Source: Calcarisporiella thermophila CBS 279.70 | Lineage: Eukaryota; Fungi; Calcarisporiellomycota | DNA: 60,586 nucleotides | Direction: 5' to 3' | Assembly: GCF_041956535.1 (NCBI RefSeq) | Contig: NW_027192228.1 | Coordinates: forward strand, 57,170 to 117,755 | Shown here: positions 4,436 to 15,626 of the stretch, in pieces | Layout of the letters: every line of letters starts with the position of its first letter | Numbering within the stretch: the first letter of the stretch is position 1 | Position numbers and translations under genes: made by a program | Notes under the pieces: generated by a model | What the model saw: only the letters and a program-made list of their open reading frames with translations | Databases searched by the model: none | What the model was told of the DNA's origin: nothing

Positions 4436-6126
4436 CTAAGAAAAAATCCCCTTCAATGTAAACTTCATGAAGAGGTACCAGCTCAGCACCATCAATCCAG
4501 CCAGCAACCCAATTCCCACGTAATTCCACCTGCTCCCCTTCCATTCCGCATCCTCTTCCACTTCCGCTTCATCTTCCAGCAACATAGCTGCTTTTTTCCC
4601 ATCCACTTCAAGTATGCTCTTTCCCCAGCGCCAATCTACTCCCCATAGCACAAGCGTCACAAAAGTAGCGACTCCAGCCAACACGATAAAGGCAGCAAAC
4701 ACTCTATCATAGCTTTTGCCTCCTTGTGTTCCATCCTGGAGCATACCTGCACAGATATCACATATAGTGGCCCCAATGTTGTTCGCTGCTTTGATCAGCC
4801 CGAACGCCGTACCCAGCAGAGACGCCTTACGCGCGAGCAATATCGGAATAGACGTGGTAAGTGCGACTGGTCCCAAAGACAGTGAAATCGAAAAAAAGAA
4901 CATGCCCACAATGGGTGTCAAGGAAGCAAATCCAAGCAACAGCTGTGACACCAAAAGTGTGATTGCTGTCAGCAAGAGGGCCTTTATTCTCCCCCCGTAT
5001 CTATCTAGCCATGTCCCTAGGAATGGGGCAATCATCACAGGCAAGGCTTGGCCAACGCTAGCCTCATAGGCTGCAATCTCCTGCGAAGAGCCAAAACGAA
5101 ACTGAACCATCTCAGTTGCATTGTGCAGAATGCTCGTCCAAAGGCCCCCCAAAAGAAATTCCAAAATAATAATAAGCCAGAAGGCGAAGGGAAGAAACCG
5201 AAGTCCAGTGAGGGAGAAGGAATTGACTCTACGCTTGAGGCTTATGGGACGGTAGCCATGAGAATGAGAGGGAATATAGAGAATATAAGCGGCATTGAGC
5301 AGAAAGCATATAACACAGATCGCCGCTGAAAACTAGAATATCGAATTATGTTGAAAAAGCAATTAACAGACTTCCTACATTATTCAATCATGTCTGCATT
5401 ACCCAAAAAGAATATTCATAGCGTCCTGTATAATTTTTGATTGGTACAACCGTTAAGTTCGCAAGAAAAGACGCCTACCAGAAAAACAGTCAATAATCAG
5501 GCTATTACATGAAGTGTAAATGAGAGGATTACCAATCGCGAGATGGATATCATTATTCCAAATACAAAAGACAGACTTTTCCCGCTAAACCACTGACACA
5601 AAATTATCTCTTGTACAATTACAATAGTTCCGCTACCAAGCCCATACATAATGCGGCCCACGATCATTAGTTGAAAGGAGCGAAGATTAGTAGCAAGTGC
5701 GGTGATAAGTGACCCAGTCGCAATTAGCGAGGTGGTTGTGAGCGATCCAGAGGAGGTTCCAAAACGATCAAGGAGCACACCGCCAACAATCGGGATGAAG
5801 GAATTAACCATGGAGACACTAAAAATATAAAGCAAACCGCTGAATAAAGCAAGCAAAATCCGGCCAGATCGCAAGTACTATTACCAAGATTGAAGGACTC
5901 CAAATTCAGAGTTGGATATTCCAAGATTTTCCTTCAAGTCGACCTTCAGTGCTCCAAGAGTGTGAGCAGCGAAATGGCTCCCAATGGCCAAAAAAAGCGC
6001 ACAAAGGAGGGCAAGGGCTCTGTAGTGCAAGGGCGAATCATGCTGGTCGGGAAATGTATGCAATACAGGGGAGGGTATTGTTTGTTTTGAGGAGGCTGAA
6101 GATAATAGCAAAGGGGTGCGTTCCAT
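4436..6126 (-). CDS. MFS transporter, MFSD1-like (lysosomal/vacuolar), multi-exon
   Basis: Exons in ORFs 5881-6126, 5497-5874 and 4436-5164. MFS motif A-like GVLLDRFG and GTWLDRYG, GRIMYGLG, many TM segments, and N-terminal dileucine ERTPLL. Confidence 0.85.
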
Positions 6127-7107: not shown

Positions 7108-7690
7108 TGCACCTCCAATTACTATATTGTAAAAAATGTTTTCTATTTGCTATACTATTCGATCCATAATAGAATTTGGGTTCTTCCGTTAATGCTAAGT
7201 GACTTCTTTAAGGCATGTCAAGTATGGCAGCTCCGGAGTACAGAAAGGGGATTCCCGACAAAGAGCGCAATGACCATTTAGAGCACAAGCAGGTTATACA
7301 TGTGGCACATATGCGAAGAGATGGTGCATCCTCATGCATCCCCAAACGCGATTCTTCCCTTCTGATTGCGACTGTAATTCAGCTTCACGTATACCTACAG
7401 GAGGATAAAGAAGAAGAAGAAGATGATGATGAAGATCTCTCTCCACTCCAATTGAAAAACCGGCCTAACTCTCCAGCCTTCCGACCCTCCTTCGGAATTC
7501 CTACATTTAGTTGATATCATCAAGTGACTCGAGTGGAGCTTAAATTTTTATTTGTACATAGTATCCCCGCTGAGATTCCCACGCTAATCCAATCAACGTA
7601 TATAAATACATTAATAACTTACAACTGCCCCTCCCTTGAGAAATATTTAACTCATACCTTTCCTTCTTTACCCGAGGCTTCCCTTGCGAA

Positions 7691-8647
7691 ATGGGCATCA
7701 TAACCAACGTCTTTGCCAAACTTTACCACAACCAGGATCCCCTGCTCACCTCCTGTGTAGCGGTGAGCGTTGGTTTGCTCGGCTACATTGTATATCGCGA
7801 GCAGTTTGATCGCTACCGTCCCAAGGAAGCCAATGACATGACACCGTTCATAAATGATCCCACCGAACATGATGGATTCACGAAGGATGAAATGATGCTT
7901 TTGCACGATCCATTTGATCTTCCCCATATTCCATTCAAGCATTTTTTGAGAAGAAAAGATGGAGAGATGGTACAGCGTGCTCGAGAGTTTTACGAACTGA
8001 TGAATGCGCGCCGCTCCGTGAGGATGTTCAGTGACGAGCCTGTGCCGATCGAAGCCATTCGAGATGCTATTCGCACTGCTGGGACTTCGCCTTCAGGTGC
8101 CCATACCGAGCCTTGGACTTTTGTGGTTGTTGGCGACAAGGCGCTCAAGCAGGAGATTCGTCGCATTGTGGAACAGGAGGAGAAGGTCAATTATGACCGG
8201 CGAATGTCGCGTCAATGGGTTAAGGATTTGGCTCCTCTTAGAACCAATTGGGAGAAGGAATATCTATCCGTCGTGCCCTATATTATTGTTGTGTTCAAGA
8301 AGGCCTATGACTTGATGCCGGACTCGAAGCGGAGGAACAATTATTACTATGAGCAAAGTACAGCCATTGCGTGCGGTCTCTTGATTGCTGCCCTCCATAA
8401 TGCGTAAGAAGTTTGCATTCTACCTTTTCACCCAATTCTTTCTTAACTCGATTCATATTATTACAGCGGTATGGCAACCCTAACCTCGACCCCCATGAAC
8501 GCAGGTCCGGACCTTGCGGCATTGCTAGGGCGCCCTGAACATGAAAAGGTCGCACTTCTTTTGCCGGTGGGTTATCCTGCCAAGGACTGCACCATCCCGA
8601 ATCTGAAACGAAAGGCATACGAGGAGATTGCAACGGAATTCCTGTAA
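7691..8647 (+). CDS. IYD: Iodotyrosine deiodinase (nitroreductase-fold FMN halotyrosine dehalogenase), N-terminal membrane anchor
   Basis: Motifs FYELMNARRSVRMFS, GTSPSGAHTEPWTFVVV, EQEEKVNY, LAPLRTNWEKEYL. Intron 8404-8466 is followed by GMATLTSTPMNAGP...LGRPEHEKVALLLPVGYPAKDCTIPNLKRK...EFL*. Confidence 0.93.
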
Positions 8648-10341
8648 AAATACCCATCACCTAGAAGATATATTATTATGTATTTGAGTAGTTTATAAAT
8701 ACTTCACCATACCTATTACTTAATAATAGCGATTCCCTTACTCATATTTAGATATATGTTCTTAGAGACTTGGCTTGAAGCTTTATCTACTATTTAAATT
8801 GAAAGGGTATTTCTTGTTTATTGTTATTGGAGCGTGTCCTATGTTTCCTTATTAACATCCACCCCCTTAAAGAAATTTTTCATCTTATTTTAAGAAAAAT
8901 CAACGGGAATGAAAATGTGCTTTGGCTTCGCAGAATAGACCGAACAAGAAGGCTTATTCTTTGAAACATATCAAAAGTATTGCTAGCACAATAAAAATAG
9001 CCTCCGATAGTTACTTAAAGCTCAGCAAATTTCTGAAAATGGTATTAAACTATATAAAAAAGGGTGTATATATATCAATGAAGTTGTTGGCTCATGGGAG
9101 GTAATCGAATTTGTTCGTGCCGTATTATGGGGTTTTTGCTCACTGCTTTATTATTACTTTTATCATTCCGATATTTCACATGCGAAGAAATTGGCTGAGG
9201 ACAAGACTTATTCCAATGCATAGATGAGCTACACATGGGGATGCTATTTTGAATCACGTTATTCTGATAAGTTTATTGAGTGCATTTCGTATACATAAGC
9301 CGACGTCTGGATGACCAACGAGGAAAAGGATGCAAACGGATCATCACAGTGGAGAATTTAGAGGTGTCTGAGTTTGGGAACCCATTGTATTGTTGGCAGC
9401 ACTTAAAAGCGATGTAAAAGACCCCTCCAAACAAATCCAATTTGCTATCGGATCCTCTCACTCGTTATATCAGAACTTGAATGGGATACACGCTATTTCA
9501 CAAAGCCAATATATTTGCATGACTATTATGTAAGTATACCTGTAGAAACTCGCATTAATGTAGCCCATCATGAAAAACTTTTGCCAAGCTCTTCTGCAAA
9601 TATTGGATCGATGTTACAGGATAAGGAGACCGTCACCGGGTGCACCCGCGAGCCATGGTGCAGCTTTTAGGGCCATTGAGTTGCGCATATATACGACTGT
9701 CAATACTGTGAGAAAAGGAGAACAAAGGGGGGCTCCGGCGAAGATTTTCCAAGCAGGAAGCTAAGCCCAGTTTTAGAAGTAAAAATAGGATTACTGCAGC
9801 CATTCTGAAGTCTAAAGCGGGATGGCCTAGATCCCTTGCAGCGGGAAGGTAGCAGGGCGAGGGGGAGAAAAACTCATTTTATCCATCCTCGGACCCCGAG
9901 AACGAATACAGAATAAAGTGGAAAGCAGGGGAGCGATCCTATGCGAGAACTGCTAAATTGCGATAACACAACCGGAGCAACTGACTAATGGGCCGGATCC
10001 AATTTTTTTTTCGGCTGGAGAAGCTGAATCTCGGGTGCACAAGCTCCCGGCTCCATTATTTGTATTTAAGAGTGCGTTGGTCCTTTGTTCTATTTCGGTT
10101 CTTTATTCTAACTGGTACTTCAACACCAGGCAAAGTGGAGGGGAAAAGAAGCGAGAATCACAAAGCCTTGATTGATTCTCGAACTCTCTTATTCTCTGGC
10201 GCTTTTGCTCGTGCGGGATCTTCCAGGTGTCTTTGCTCTTCTTCCTTCATTAGACGATCATACTGAATTCCGTGAATCTCTCCCTCCTCTTGGAATCCAC
10301 GCGATCAATCCGGCCGGTCCGCATTGAGATTTCCCCTCACC

Positions 10342-11157: not shown

Positions 11158-12773
11158 ATGGCCTTTTCGATATTCTTACTCATCTTTCCAGTGGCTGTCC
11201 TCGCCCAGCAGCTTCATTTTCAGGCCCATTCTCAACCTCCCAAAATTGCCATCATAGGTGCTGGTGCAGCCGGGTCCTCCTTCGCGTATTTTGCTTCCAG
11301 TGATCTCCCTTTCGCTCAGGTTACGGTGTATGAAAGAGATCGGGTGGGTGGGAGAACTCGAGTTATTGAGGTGCCTGGAATTGGCGTAGAAGAAATAGGG
11401 GCTACAATCCACGTGCGCGCAAACCGGCATCTGGCCAATGCAGTTAAGGATTTTGGGTTGAGTTTAGGTGGCAGTAGCGAGGACGAGCGTGTAGGTAATT
11501 GATGGTTTATCGATTCACAATGCAGAATAGGCGTGCGAATTAATTGCCCTCGTACCATTCCTTTTGTCAAACTTTATTTCAAGTACAGGTGTATGGGATG
11601 GGCAGGAATTCATTTTCTTGGAGAGCGATGGCTGGTGGGACAAGCTCAAGCTATTATGGCGATACGGTTTTTCCCCATTTAAAGTACTTGTAGTTGCTCT
11701 TTGGCGTAATGCCTGCTTCGCTCACGCCATTTTAAATCTCTGCTCCTTACCGCCTCTAGATGCGTGCCTTGGTTCAATCGGCTGTTACACGTTTTCTCAA
11801 CTTTTATGACCCTGCTTTCCCAGCATTCCATAATCTCTCCGAAGCAATCAAATACTTCAAATTCGAAGAAGAGTTGGCTTTCCCTGGACTTGGCTACGTA
11901 TCTAACCATGGGATAAGTGCGGCGTTTGCGCACGATCTTGTCCAGACAGGCACCCGCGCTAATTACATGCAAGATCTGGATAAAATCCATGGCCTTGGCA
12001 CGCTGGTCAGCCTGGCCACCAGCGGCGCTAGAACCGTGGCCAATGGATCCTACCAGATATTTGAAGAAATGCTGAAGCGTTCACGTGCACAGACTCGACT
12101 CGGGTATAGTGTGACCTCCATTTCACGGATAAATGCAAGCAAGAATGAGGAGAGAATACAATACTTGGTGGCATCGCAAAACGCAGACGGCACCAGCCAT
12201 GAGGAAAAGTACGATGCCGTTGTATTAGCCGCACCTCTTCATCTTGCCAACATCACGTTTCATGATTTTCCAATCTCTATCCCCTTCGCCCCGAATATTG
12301 CCTACAAGCAGGTGTACATCACAGTTCTGAAAGCCCGCTCCATCCTCCCCACCGTTTTCAATACCCCCGATCTACCACAGATGATCATCACGACCCCCGA
12401 AGCCAATGCTCCTTTCACCAGTCTCTCCAAGCGCAAGTGTAATGCTGAAGAGTGCGCTTTTCGCCTCTTCTCAAACCATGAAATTAGCGATCGCCAGCTG
12501 GATACGATTTTTGAAGCAGTGTCATGGGTGCATAGACACGTGTGGGACGCGTTTCCTATTCTTCGCCCGTTGAGGGAACCCGAATCGATCCAGAATGAAT
12601 TGAACGTGGACGTGAATCTGGATGGACACGAGTGCTACTACGCGAATGCGTTTGAACCGCTGATATCGACGATGGAGACCGAAACCGTTGCAAGTCGAAA
12701 TATTGTTAAAATTCTTGTAGAAAAATGGGGGGCAGTAAGCCAAACAAAGACGGAGGAACGAGACGAATTTTAA
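11158..12773 (+). CDS. Prenylcysteine oxidase/lyase (FAD-dependent), 3 exons
   Basis: Signal peptide, KIAIIGAGAAG Rossmann motif, ERDRVGGR, GVWDGQEF, LLWRYGFSP, NAFEPLISTMETETVASRN, and C-terminal RDEF. Confidence 0.9.
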
Positions 12774-13079: not shown

Positions 13080-15626
13080 TCACCAAGTACGAGCAGCTGC
13101 AGCCCGTACGGCTTCATCCAAATCAACGTGGAAATAGGGGGCCGTCAACTCAACAGTGGTTGTTTCCGTTGCCGCTGGAGAATCTCGATGTTGACTCTTC
13201 TCGATATCTCTTTTATCTTCGTCGTTGCTTTCTTCTGTATCCTCGCTGCGGAGAGGATTGCTGGTTGCCCCATCCGGGGATATTTCCGATGAGATGTTTT
13301 CATGACGCTTCGCAATACCGAACCCACCAGCGATCAGCGCTCGCCGCACATCACCCTCAATTATGCCGGCAAAGTGCCACTCCACCTCTCGACCTGCATA
13401 GCGATTGATCTGGGTCCTCAAATCCACCAGCACTAGCAATCCCGTCGTGTCCACGTGATGAACCCCAGAGAAATCGAGGACAAGCGCCTTGAGAACGGGG
13501 AGCTCTTCAGAGGACTGCTTGGCAAGTTTGGCAATACGCCTATGGTTTCCGGCTTCATTCCAAGGCCAATCACCTTTTTTCTCTGGCTGCTTGCCCGCGT
13601 ATCGCGTGTGTTTTTCTACATACTCCACAATTTTGTCGGCAATATAGTTGGCATTTGGATAGGTTAAAGCTTCTTCAAATCGGAATATTAACACGCCTGG
13701 GGGAGGATTCTCAATGGTAGTGGTGGCCTTAAGGGTATTGTGTTCTATCGGAACATAGAGGTTGCGTACTTGATTTGGCAAGGAGGTCGCAACAGAATCC
13801 TCTTGGGGGTGGGTTGAATCGACACGCACACGACCAAGAATATTATAACGAGGGCGAGCAACCCGGAAGAGAAGTTGTAGTAAGGAGAGAGCAATAGTGG
13901 AGTAGATACCCCACTCCACGGTCGAGAAAAGCGTTACAATGACACCAACGAAAAAGATGAAGACCTCAAATGCTGCCATAGAGGAAGAGAGTTTCGTGAA
14001 TACATTAGATAAGATATATTCTCTATCAACTCGCCCGATTGCAACTTACGATTCACCCTCCAGAACTGCTTCAATGCTTTTGGACCGACTATTAGGTCGC
14101 CCACTGCATGAATAATGACCGCTGCCAACGCGGAATTTGGAATATAGTAGAAAGCAGGTGTCAATACGAAAAGGGCTAGAATCACTACCACCCCGGAGAA
14201 GATGCCAGCAAATGGCGTTCGAACGCCAGACCTTGATTTAATGGCAGAGCGCGAAAAAGAACCTGTGGCAGGGTAAGCTGAGAAAAAGGATGCAATCATA
14301 TTGGTGACCCCGATGGCGATGAGCTCCTGGTTCGGGTTGACTTTAATGCGATTACGATGGTGAGTAGAGAAAATCAAGAGCGGAAAATTTTCTGGTTCTT
14401 ACTTTTGTATCCGTTCACACGACCGAAGGATTTGGCGATGGCTACATGCTCTAAAACCAAGATTAAAGCCGTACTTGGGATGTAGGGAGCTATACGGGAA
14501 AGCAGCTCTGTATTAATGTAGGGGACATGTACTTCTCGGAAGCCAGACGGCACGTTCTTCAATATTGAAATGGGGGGGCTAGTGGGATTATCCTTGCAAA
14601 TTCCATAGGAGATTGCTGTGTAAAAGATGACGAGCAAAACGTTGCGCGAGATGTTGAGGAAAAATAAGGGCCTTTTGAAGCGTGGATAGCTTTTTGAGAA
14701 TCGACTTGTTAGATATTGTAACAGGTATAAGAAAAATAATCCCGTCAATCCCATGGATGCATCTAGGGTGGTTCTAGGCAAAGCTTTGAGGGAGTTGATG
14801 AGAACCAGATAAGCGGCTGCGCGGGAATCCACTCCAGTTATGCCTAGCAGGGATGGTATTTGTCCGATGGAGATGGTGATGGCGGAACCGGTCATGAACC
14901 CCGCAATGGCGGGGTTGGGGATGAAATCGACAATAAACCCTAGCCGAAGGAGTCCTAGACCTGTAGAAATAATACCACACACAAGGGCTGCTGCTGTAGC
15001 GATAGCCACGTTACTAAACTCAGAGGTTACGCTTGTCACAGAGGTGACAACATGGCTAATGACAAGCGACATAACTGCGGTCGGGCCTAATTTAACAAAT
15101 TAGGAAATGAGTAAATTAATCCACAAGTATGCACGCGACTTACCGATAGTCATATCCTTGGAAGTGGCAAAGAAGCAATAGAGAAATACGCCAACAAACG
15201 ATGTGTATAGCCCGTACTCTGGGGTAAGCGTAGCAATTTTGGCATATGCCATTCCCTATGGTGGCAAGTGATTAATCGCGTGTTTTAATATTCATGGCAT
15301 ACAGATAGCAATGAATCATCGTCGTAAAGCCTTGGGGCCATGTCAATAGATAAATTGAACTTTCGAATAAGATAACTAACCTGCGGAACCACTACACAGC
15401 CGACTGTTATACCTGCAATCAAGTCCCCAATCAACCACGTTATATTGTAGTGCGGTAGCCAGTTTGCAATTGGAAATAGCTCGATCAAATAATTCAGCAA
15501 CGCTTGACCAGATAACTTAATGCCGCCCCGTAAGGTGGAAATGAGCCGATCTTTGGAGATAGGATGCCTTTGGTCGTCGAAGACAATGGCTTCACGAGTA
15601 GTGGGCAATTGTTCTGCTGAAGCCAT
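13080..15626 (-). CDS. SulP/SLC26 sulfate permease with STAS domain
   Basis: GDLIAGITVGCVVVPQ, AIAGFMTGSA, NQELIAIG, YPATGSFSRSA, and STAS motif LDFSGVHHVDTTG. Several short introns. Confidence 0.92.

What the first reader, a model, noticed from the sequence alone, without database searches (positions are those of the whole stretch)
7691..8647. Intact, membrane-anchored, animal-type iodotyrosine deiodinase in a fungal genome
Seen: an uninterrupted 2-exon gene with a host-style 63-nt GT-AG intron, embedded among fungal genes, so it is resident rather than a bacterial contaminant. It keeps the residues equivalent to human IYD E157/Y161/K182 (EQEEKVNY, TNWEKEY), which bind the halotyrosine zwitterion. 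It also keeps the FMN-N5 Thr loop (TSTP), RRSVR, the metazoan-like SGAHTEPW and an N-terminal hydrophobic anchor. Known: IYD is characterised in animals and some bacteria and archaea and is absent from model yeasts; to my knowledge it is not a characterised fungal enzyme. Inference: either an ancestral opisthokont gene retained in this lineage or HGT, implying fungal halotyrosine turnover (e.g. from arthropod cuticle or soil organohalogens).
Basis: partly seen in the sequence, partly recalled or inferred. Interest (0 to 1): 0.82.

Follow-up and report, generated by a model that had tools for sequence, protein, structure and literature searches.

The report
Iodotyrosine deiodinase gene in a fungus
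The thermophilic early-diverging fungus Calcarisporiella thermophila carries one intact gene for iodotyrosine deiodinase, the enzyme animals use to strip halogens from tyrosine. It looks like a rare relic of an old eukaryotic gene that nearly all other fungi have lost.

Summary
Window 7691-8403 plus 8467-8647, split by one 63-nt GT-AG intron, encodes a 297-aa protein. NCBI lists it as 'uncharacterized protein VTP21DRAFT_8183 [Calcarisporiella thermophila]'.

Both exons match solved human and mouse iodotyrosine deiodinase (IYD) colinearly (E 1.8e-56 and 1.7e-19, about 55-58% identity). The halotyrosine-binding Glu/Tyr/Lys triad, the FMN-N5 Thr, the FMN-phosphate arginines, the lid (E1), the E2 extension and an N-terminal hydrophobic helix are all present. 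The 25 best matches to the AlphaFold model are all IYDs. A homodimer with FMN is predicted (0.96, best control 0.00).

It is the only nitroreductase-family gene found in this genome, and its neighbours are fungal.

It is not unique in fungi. Unnamed orthologues exist in Chytriomyces (chytrids) and in the nucleariid Parvularia. Others occur in a choanoflagellate, Corallochytrium, Perkinsus and a euglenozoan.

In ML trees the fungal copies form one clade inside a well-supported opisthokont clade, outside animals. This favours vertical retention with wide loss over transfer from an animal, but AU tests do not formally exclude an arthropod donor (p 0.055-0.098).

No paper found mentions a fungal IYD. 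Activity, expression and substrate remain untested. Verdict: a new member of a known kind, of moderate interest.

The parts
7691..8403 (+). Exon 1 of the IYD gene (Met1 to the first two bases of codon 238). It holds the N-terminal anchor, the FMN-phosphate site, the E1 lid and the E2 extension.
   Evidence: The ORF is 100% identical to P0001 residues 1-237. It matches human IYD 4ttb at E 1.8e-56.
8404..8466 (+). The single 63-nt intron: GTAAGA donor, TTAAC branch-like site, ACAG acceptor; phase 2 in codon Ala238.
   Evidence: Read from the sequence. Removing it joins the two exons colinearly with human IYD chain positions 200 and 202 and gives exactly the NCBI protein. There is no RNA evidence.
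8467..8647 (+). Exon 2 (last base of codon 238, Gly239 to Leu297, stop TAA). It holds the Thr loop and the C-terminal strand.
   Evidence: Matches mouse IYD 3tnz at E 1.7e-19, chain positions 196-250. It equals P0001 residues 239-297.
7739..7795 (+). Residues 17-35 (PLLTSCVAVSVGLLGYIVY): the presumed single membrane anchor, followed by a basic stretch (REQFDRYRPK).
   Evidence: Kyte-Doolittle mean 1.76 over 19 residues. AlphaFold models a helix at 17-42 with pLDDT 86-93. It aligns with the anchors of animal IYDs.
8009..8023 (+). R107-R108-S109-V110-R111, equivalent to the FMN-phosphate-binding arginines of human IYD (R100/R101/R104).
   Evidence: R107 and R111 are invariant and R108 at least 90% conserved across 48 eukaryotic and bacterial IYD-type sequences. 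The alignment to human IYD is ungapped.
8171..8266 (+). The E1 lid region (residues 161-192) with E164, Y168 and K189, the triad that binds the amino-acid zwitterion of halotyrosine.
   Evidence: E164, Y168 and K189 are invariant in 48 sequences. Their spacing equals that of human E157/Y161/K182. The role of the triad is taken from PMC8668982.
8489..8491 (+). Thr246, equivalent to human Thr239, which hydrogen-bonds FMN N5 when the lid closes.
   Evidence: At least 90% conserved. The offset of +7 to human numbering is constant. The role is taken from PMC8668982 and the title of PDB entry 5yak.

Best explanation
This is an expressed-looking, single-copy fungal orthologue of iodotyrosine deiodinase (halotyrosine dehalogenase), an FMN enzyme of the nitroreductase superfamily.

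Inferred mechanism, by homology. Two subunits form a domain-swapped homodimer with one FMN in each of two interface sites. A free 3-halotyrosine (iodo-, bromo- or chloro-) binds over the flavin. Its zwitterion is held by Glu164, Tyr168 and Lys189 of the lid, the lid closes, and Thr246 comes onto flavin N5. Reduced FMN then removes the halogen reductively, giving tyrosine and halide.

The N-terminal helix (17-35) probably tethers the enzyme to a membrane. The basic residues that follow it suggest a catalytic domain facing the cytosol.

Origin. The gene is most likely a vertically inherited relic of an ancestral opisthokont (probably older eukaryotic) gene. It survives in Calcarisporiella, Chytriomyces and nucleariids and has been lost from most fungi.

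Shown here: the gene structure, family membership by sequence, residues and predicted fold, the predicted dimer, and the phylogenetic position. Inferred: catalysis, substrate, membrane topology, electron donor and physiological role.
For: Colinear matches of both exons to solved IYDs, with generic nitroreductases far weaker: E 1e-56 against 1e-8 or worse.

The defining residues are all conserved.

The AlphaFold model has pLDDT 90.4. Its 25 best PDB matches are all IYDs; the best is substrate-bound human 4ttc at TM 0.89 and 55% identity.

The homodimer with FMN scored 0.96, best control 0.00. That mark was reached by 21 of 30 proteins solved as pairs and 0 of 23 solved as single chains. The runs agree in at least 97% of contacts and the partner's pLDDT is at least 93. 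The pass may be from memory of solved IYD dimers.

No NCBIfam family reaches its cut-off; BluB scores 62.7 against 150.

The gene is single-copy and the only PF00881 match in the genome.

The contig is fungal.

Trees: fungal clade 98-100/92-93, opisthokont clade 99-100/95, eukaryotes against bacteria 100/99. Holomycota held as one clade is not rejected, p-AU 0.28.

The N-terminus MG[ILF][ILV][ST]N...DP plus anchor is shared with Chytriomyces, Parvularia and P0002.
Against: No RNA run was listed, so neither expression nor the splice is shown. There is no biochemical data for any fungal IYD.

The tree rests on about 207 columns. The branch placing fungi outside animals is only moderately supported (80-90/88-89). 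Parvularia does not group with the fungi in the free tree. AU tests leave an arthropod-donor topology unrejected (p 0.098 and 0.055).

No intron position is shared exactly with Chytriomyces or a fish.

The anchor is less hydrophobic than in vertebrates (1.76 against 2.87).

No source of halotyrosine in this fungus is known.
Confidence: 0.8

Rival explanations
1. It is a true IYD but was acquired by horizontal transfer from an animal (for example an arthropod) into an early fungal lineage, or separately into the Calcarisporiella and chytrid lineages, rather than inherited vertically.
For: The best named hits of the first search are crustaceans and insects, at up to 61-62% identity over the core. 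Distribution in fungi is extremely patchy. AU tests do not reject fungi plus decapods (p 0.098, dlnL 21.7) or Calcarisporiella plus P0002 plus decapods (p 0.055, dlnL 34.8).
Against: The free ML trees put all fungal copies in one strongly supported clade outside Metazoa. The forced arthropod topologies cost 22-35 log-likelihood units. A nucleariid, a choanoflagellate and Corallochytrium also carry the gene, so an opisthokont ancestor with it is the simpler reading. The fungal genes have their own intron positions. The N-terminal motif is shared across Holomycota.
Confidence: 0.12
2. The protein keeps the IYD fold but works mainly in another way: as a regulatory partner of a membrane protein (as proposed for C. 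elegans SUP-18 and the SUP-9 K+ channel), or as a general flavin, nitro or quinone reductase.
For: The C. elegans IYD orthologue SUP-18 was found as a regulator of a two-pore K+ channel (PMC3930498, abstract seen). The physiological substrate of IYD outside chordates is known only for Drosophila (PMC11126969). It is the only nitroreductase-family gene detected in this genome, so it might cover broader reductase duties.
Against: The zwitterion-binding triad and the N5 Thr serve halotyrosine chemistry specifically, and they are strictly kept here and in all fungal copies. Every IYD homologue assayed so far, from human, mouse, Drosophila, Haliscomenobacter and Thermotoga, dehalogenates halotyrosines.
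Confidence: 0.07
3. The gene is a contaminant or an assembly or annotation artefact and is not part of the fungal genome.
For: Nothing beyond the animal-like top hits.
Against: It lies inside a 117,755-base contig of the C. thermophila assembly. GC content matches the flanks. The neighbours are spliced eukaryotic genes, and one of them has all its named best hits in fungi. Its closest relatives are fungal, not animal.
Confidence: 0.01

Closest known systems
Human and mouse iodotyrosine deiodinase (IYD/DEHAL1; PDB 4TTB/4TTC, 3GB5/3GFD/3TNZ)
   Same: About 55-58% identity over the catalytic domain, ungapped. Same Glu/Tyr/Lys triad, N5 Thr and phosphate arginines, and full-length E1 lid and E2. 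An N-terminal single hydrophobic anchor followed by a linker. Predicted fold TM 0.89 and predicted FMN homodimer.
   Different: The host is a fungus with no thyroid hormone system. The linker between anchor and core has a different sequence and is modelled with low confidence (residues 43-75). The anchor is less hydrophobic. The gene has one intron, at a position not shared with a fish IYD gene. It has never been assayed.
Drosophila and Daphnia IYD (halotyrosine dehalogenase; bromotyrosine is the native substrate in Drosophila)
   Same: Members of the same opisthokont clade. Organisms that do not need iodide, so they are a better functional analogy: removal of bromo- or chlorotyrosine (PMC11126969).
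   Different: These are animals. The fungal clade branches outside Metazoa. No phenotype or substrate is known for the fungal enzyme.
Unnamed orthologues in Chytriomyces hyalinus, C. confervae and Chytriomyces sp. MP71, and in the nucleariid Parvularia atlantis
   Same: The nearest relatives, at 52-63% identity. They share the N-terminal MG...DP motif and anchor. The Chytriomyces copies form one clade with the window's gene.
   Different: They are annotated only as hypothetical or nitroreductase-like. Their intron positions differ: three introns in C. hyalinus, none at the Calcarisporiella site. Their gene neighbours differ: Neurochondrin, PEX11 and a CH domain, against MFS, prenylcysteine lyase and SLC26 here. 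Parvularia does not join the fungal clade in the free tree.
Bacterial IYDs (Haliscomenobacter hydrossis 5KO7/5KO8; Thermotoga neapolitana 6PZ0)
   Same: Same subgroup, triad and chemistry. Fold TM 0.83-0.90.
   Different: Only 31-45% identical. They have no N-terminal anchor. The thermophile forms lack E2 and one E1 residue (PMC8668982), whereas this thermophilic fungus keeps the full eukaryote-type architecture. Bacteria are separated from eukaryotes in the tree at 100/99.

Membership tests
Iodotyrosine deiodinase subgroup of the nitroreductase superfamily | Nitroreductase (PF00881) FMN-binding core | tested here: met
   PF00881 at E 2.8e-13, 50.8 bits against a cut-off of 23.5. The fold matches IYDs first and then nitroreductases.
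Iodotyrosine deiodinase subgroup of the nitroreductase superfamily | Glu/Tyr/Lys triad in the E1 lid that binds the halotyrosine zwitterion (human E157/Y161/K182; TnIYD E68/Y72/K92) | tested here: met
   E164, Y168 and K189 are invariant in 48 sequences with human-identical spacing. The definition is from PMC8668982.
Iodotyrosine deiodinase subgroup of the nitroreductase superfamily | Thr next to FMN N5 (human T239) | tested here: met
   T246 in TLTSTP, aligned ungapped to the human and mouse TTTP and at least 90% conserved.
Iodotyrosine deiodinase subgroup of the nitroreductase superfamily | Closer to characterised IYDs than to any other nitroreductase subgroup | tested here: met
   PDB by sequence: IYDs at E 1e-50 to 1e-56, the next non-IYD at 1.5e-08. 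Foldseek ranks 1-25 are all IYDs. BluB, FbiB and NfsA models all fall far below their cut-offs.
Iodotyrosine deiodinase subgroup of the nitroreductase superfamily | Alpha2 homodimer with FMN at the subunit interface | tested here: met
   Prediction only. Score 0.96 against best control 0.00. The mark was reached by 21 of 30 proteins solved as pairs and 0 of 23 solved as single chains. Contacts agree in at least 97% and the partner's pLDDT is at least 93. The pass may be from memory of solved IYD dimers.
Iodotyrosine deiodinase subgroup of the nitroreductase superfamily | Reductive dehalogenation of I-, Br- and Cl-tyrosine | not testable with these tools
   Needs enzyme assays.
Eukaryote (animal)-type IYD architecture | N-terminal extension with a single membrane anchor, plus a full-length E2 extension | tested here: met
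   Hydrophobic helix 17-35. No gap relative to human IYD across E2, residues 205-217. The architecture is as described in PMC8668982. Membrane insertion itself was not tested.
Vertically inherited opisthokont gene (as opposed to an animal-to-fungus transfer) | The fungal copies are monophyletic and branch outside Metazoa; the species-tree topology is not rejected; donor topologies are rejected | tested here: inconclusive
   Fungal clade 98-100/92-93, outside Metazoa at 80-90/88-89. Holomycota monophyly gives p-AU 0.28. The arthropod-donor constraints give p 0.098 and 0.055 and are not formally rejected.

The most novel reading that the evidence does not exclude
Halotyrosine dehalogenation would be an ancestral eukaryotic trait. 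The few fungal lineages that kept IYD (Calcarisporiella, the chitin-loving chytrid Chytriomyces) would do so because they really meet or make halotyrosines. The source could be halogenated arthropod cuticle proteins or their own peroxidase chemistry. That would reveal a fungal halogen and tyrosine turnover pathway not recognised before. It would also supply a naturally heat-adapted, full-length eukaryote-type IYD useful for engineering aerobic dehalogenases.
Probability: 0.2. Interest if true: 0.65.

Novelty: new member of a known kind. Interest (0 to 1): 0.45.

Why it matters
[quoted passage not shown] None mentions a fungal member.

A clear fungal orthologue, with chytrid, nucleariid, choanoflagellate, alveolate and euglenozoan relatives, moves the gene's origin well before animals and thyroid signalling. 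It makes fungi a case of massive loss with rare retention.

It gives an experimentally easy handle, a small soluble FMN domain, for asking what halotyrosines do in organisms without iodine physiology.

Because the host is a thermophile yet keeps the N-terminal extension, full E1 and E2, it runs against the pattern described for thermophile IYDs, which have minimal cores. It may be a sturdier scaffold for bioremediation engineering.

The result is still incremental. The family, fold and chemistry are known, and the gene is already in public annotation, though unnamed.

Tried and rejected
RNA evidence: no RNA run was listed for 7500-8800, so read laying was not used and the splice is unverified by reads.

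I did not build or submit a joined sequence. Full-length work used the database record P0001 returned, whose two parts I checked piecewise against the exons.

Intron conservation as a test of vertical descent: Chytriomyces introns lie after TE140, at L183|R184 (phase 0) and in codon A234 (phase 1). A fish (Scleropages) has introns in the R184-equivalent codon (phase 2) and at the H236|N237 equivalent (phase 0). Calcarisporiella has its intron in codon A238 (phase 2). These are close but never identical, so they give no evidence either way.

Synteny: the Chytriomyces neighbours are unrelated to the window's, so a conserved 'halide salvage' cluster is not supported.

AU tests on the 91-row set did not finish. 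I repeated them on 46 rows. The tested groups were chosen after I had seen the hit lists and trees.

A naive enumeration of GT-AG joins in neighbouring genes, meant to test 'host-style intron', was too ambiguous to use.

Phatarphekar et al. 2014 (PMC3858845) is not held. The Orussus protein had no contig on record.

The organism behind P0002 (Logan ERR15302235, an intron-less 979-bp contig) could not be identified.

Limits on the absence claim: fungal absence rests on capped lists. These are the best 120 of 8000 scored candidates and the best 150 representatives, of which I could name 30. More fungal copies may exist.

Full report
**1. What is in the sequence**

On the + strand an ATG at 7691 opens a 238-codon ORF. 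It ends at a TAA that overlaps a GTAAGA donor at 8404. A 63-nt GT-AG intron (8404-8466) has a TTAAC branch-like site 18 nt before the ACAG acceptor. It joins in phase 2 (GC|C = Ala238) to a second exon, 8467-8647, which ends in TAA.

The word search with exon 1 returned a 297-aa NCBI/UniRef record, P0001, 'uncharacterized protein VTP21DRAFT_8183 [Calcarisporiella thermophila]', on a contig of 117,755 bases. Its residues 1-237 equal the exon 1 translation and residues 239-297 equal the exon 2 translation.

The window is the end of contig C38 of a 28.2-Mb assembly. The strain is CBS 279.70, sequenced for the thermophilic-fungi study PMC11393059. NCBI places the species in its own phylum, Calcarisporiellomycota.

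**2. The protein is an IYD, not a generic nitroreductase**

- Pfam sees only the superfamily domain PF00881.
- Against all PDB sequences, exon 1 matches human IYD 4TTB/5YAK at E 1.8e-56, mouse IYD at 2.5e-55 and Haliscomenobacter IYD at 1.3e-50. The best non-IYD nitroreductase scores 1.5e-08.
- Exon 2 matches mouse and human IYD at 1e-17 to 1e-19, starting one residue after the point where exon 1's match stops. The splice is therefore colinear with solved proteins.
- The alignment is ungapped from about residue 88 to 293, with a constant offset of +7 to human numbering.
- The residues that define the subgroup are present: the zwitterion-binding Glu/Tyr/Lys and the N5 Thr, with roles as described in PMC8668982. 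Here they are E164, Y168, K189 and T246.
- The arginines R107, R108 and R111 are also present. E164, Y168, K189, R107 and R111 are invariant, and T246 and R108 at least 90% conserved, in 48 eukaryotic and bacterial relatives.
- No NCBIfam model (BluB, FbiB, NfsA and others) comes near its cut-off.
- An AlphaFold model built on that alignment has mean pLDDT 90.4. Its 25 best Foldseek matches in the PDB are all IYDs. The best is substrate-bound human 4TTC (TM 0.89 by target, 55% identity). Generic nitroreductases follow at TM 0.73 or lower.
- A homodimer of residues 76-297 with two FMN scored 0.96 against a best control of 0.00. That mark was reached by 21 of 30 proteins solved as pairs and 0 of 23 solved as single chains. 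The runs agree in at least 97% of contacts and the partner's pLDDT is at least 93. The tool warns that such a pass may come from memory of solved IYD dimers.

**3. Architecture**

Residues 17-35 form the most hydrophobic 19-residue stretch. Their Kyte-Doolittle mean is 1.76, just over the classical 1.6 threshold but below Xenopus at 2.87. They are modelled as part of a confident helix, 17-42, followed by a low-confidence linker. The basic run after this helix suggests, by the positive-inside rule, a cytosolic catalytic domain. That is an inference.

There is no deletion in E1 or E2 relative to human IYD. PMC8668982 describes thermophile IYDs as lacking the N-terminal extension, one E1 residue and the ten-residue E2. 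This enzyme from a thermophilic eukaryote keeps all three.

**4. It is resident in a fungal genome**

- GC content across the gene (0.43-0.44) matches the flanks.
- The neighbours are multi-exon eukaryotic genes: an MFS transporter, prenylcysteine lyase, an SLC26 sulfate permease and a paladin-like phosphatase.
- The prenylcysteine-lyase neighbour is VTP21DRAFT_8186, and all its named best hits are fungi: Basidiomycota and Mortierellomycota.
- The gene is single-copy and is the only PF00881 match detected in the genome. Those counts are lower bounds.

**5. Relatives**

The first search listed almost only animals, with shrimps, wasps and vertebrates at 44-62% identity. An exhaustive HMMER scan of 1.84 billion 50%-identity representatives found 213 at E no greater than 1e-30.

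The best-scoring representatives were named as follows:

| Representative | Organism | Note |
|---|---|---|
| P0121 | Chytriomyces hyalinus | 'hypothetical protein', 56% identity |
| P0127 | Chytriomyces sp. MP71 | 'Nitroreductase-like protein' |
| P0123 | Parvularia atlantis | nucleariid, 59% identity |
| P0136 | Choanoeca flexa | choanoflagellate |
| P0143 | Corallochytrium | |
| P0142 | Perkinsus | |
| P0186 | Petalomonas | |
| P0134 | Daphnia | characterised IYD |
| others | nematodes, a flatworm, an echinoderm, insects | |
| others | Bacteroidota, Phycisphaerae, Anaerolineae | bacterial forms |

A profile of the four holomycotan sequences pulled out C. confervae and a second C. hyalinus record, and then dropped about 100 bits to animals.

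P0002 comes from an intron-less 979-bp Logan contig of run ERR15302235, organism unknown. It is 48-52% identical over the full length including the N-terminus.

The N-terminal motif MG[ILF][ILV][ST]N...DP plus the anchor is shared by Calcarisporiella, P0002, Chytriomyces and Parvularia.

So the gene is rare in fungi but not unique to this species. None of the fungal copies has a functional name.

**6. Origin**

I built ML trees of the catalytic core (about 207 columns, LG+C20+F+G4 PMSF) on 91 rows and on 46 rows. Supports are ultrafast bootstrap / SH-aLRT.

| Grouping | Support |
|---|---|
| Calcarisporiella + P0002 | 99-100 / 83-88 |
| That pair + Chytriomyces | 98-100 / 92-93 |
| Opisthokont clade (fungi, animals, choanoflagellate, nucleariid) | 99-100 / 95 |
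| Fungal clade as sister to all other opisthokont sequences | 80-90 / 88-89 |
| Eukaryotes against bacteria | 100 / 99 |

AU tests on the 46-row set:

| Rows held as one clade | dlnL | p-AU | Outcome |
|---|---|---|---|
| Fungi + Parvularia (the species tree) | 7.5 | 0.28 | compatible |
| Fungi + decapods | 21.7 | 0.098 | not rejected |
| Calcarisporiella + P0002 + decapods, without chytrids | 34.8 | 0.055 | borderline |

The groups were chosen after I had seen hit lists and trees, so these p values are indicative only.

Intron positions do not help. They are near one another but never identical between Calcarisporiella, Chytriomyces and a fish.

My reading: vertical retention of an ancestral opisthokont, probably older eukaryotic, gene with widespread loss in fungi, at about 0.75-0.8. 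An ancient transfer from an animal lineage is at about 0.12.

**7. Function**

All IYD homologues assayed so far (human, mouse, Drosophila, Haliscomenobacter, Thermotoga) dehalogenate iodo-, bromo- and chlorotyrosine. In Drosophila the native substrate is bromotyrosine (PMC11126969 and PMC8668982).

By homology I expect the fungal enzyme to remove halogen reductively from free halotyrosines at a membrane surface. The electron donor is unknown, as it is in animals.

The source of substrate is open. From memory, not tested here: Chytriomyces hyalinus is a chitin-loving saprobe of arthropod exuviae, and halotyrosines occur in arthropod cuticle.

**8. What is known**

The full-text searches found no paper that mentions a fungal IYD. 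The specialist papers speak of Metazoa plus limited bacteria and archaea, or 'all three domains'. A 2025 preprint notes IYD homologues in diatoms and alveolates. The key 2014 survey (PMC3858845) is not held, so I cannot say what it states about fungi.

**9. Verdict**

This is a new, unassayed fungal member of a well-known enzyme family, most likely a vertical relic. It is not categorically new.

Interest is moderate, at 0.45. It revises the stated taxonomic range of IYD, supports a pre-metazoan origin, and offers a thermophile-derived full-length eukaryotic IYD. The chemistry and fold are already known, though, and expression, activity and physiological role remain untested.

Noticed in passing
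P0124, P0128 (Caldalkalibacillus salinus WP_202077538), P0146, P0150, P0160, P0162, P0168, P0175, P0176, P0199: A clade of bacterial proteins of about 370-445 aa holds two tandem IYD-like domains in one chain. This could be a fused pseudo-dimer of the normally homodimeric enzyme.
   Followed up: no
L002:10001-11276 (Chytriomyces hyalinus) and P0127 (Chytriomyces sp. MP71): The public chytrid gene models look imperfect. P0121 carries a roughly 55-residue insert after the anchor that is absent from its relatives. P0127 has a long unsupported N-terminal extension and lacks the segment between TNWEK and SNSIACG.
   Followed up: partly
window 7691-7730 (residues 1-13) and the N-termini of P0002, P0121, P0123 and P0003: The conserved start MG[LIF][ILV][ST/A]N... 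sits before the anchor in Holomycota and in a shrimp. A Gly2 start with a small or Asn residue at position 6 resembles an N-myristoylation signal, so the protein could be dually anchored. This is only a resemblance.
   Followed up: no
window 4436-5874 (-), 11158-12773 (+), 13080-15626 (-): The neighbours are an MFS transporter, a prenylcysteine lyase/oxidase and an SLC26 anion transporter. The arrangement is not found around the Chytriomyces orthologues.
   Followed up: partly
P0143 (Corallochytrium limacisporum, EukProt): This holozoan IYD-like sequence does not join the opisthokont clade. It falls at the base of, or with, the bacterial group in the trees, which suggests a separate history or a long-branch effect.
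   Followed up: no
P0131 / P0383 (Drosophila santomea and D. yakuba, 792-794 aa): These are annotated as a fusion of a MADF-domain protein with the IYD domain at the C-terminus. This may be a merged gene model.
   Followed up: no
G000 (whole assembly): The IYD gene is the only Pfam nitroreductase (PF00881) match reported in the 28-Mb genome. No Frm2/Hbn1-type fungal nitroreductase was seen. The count is a lower bound.
   Followed up: partly
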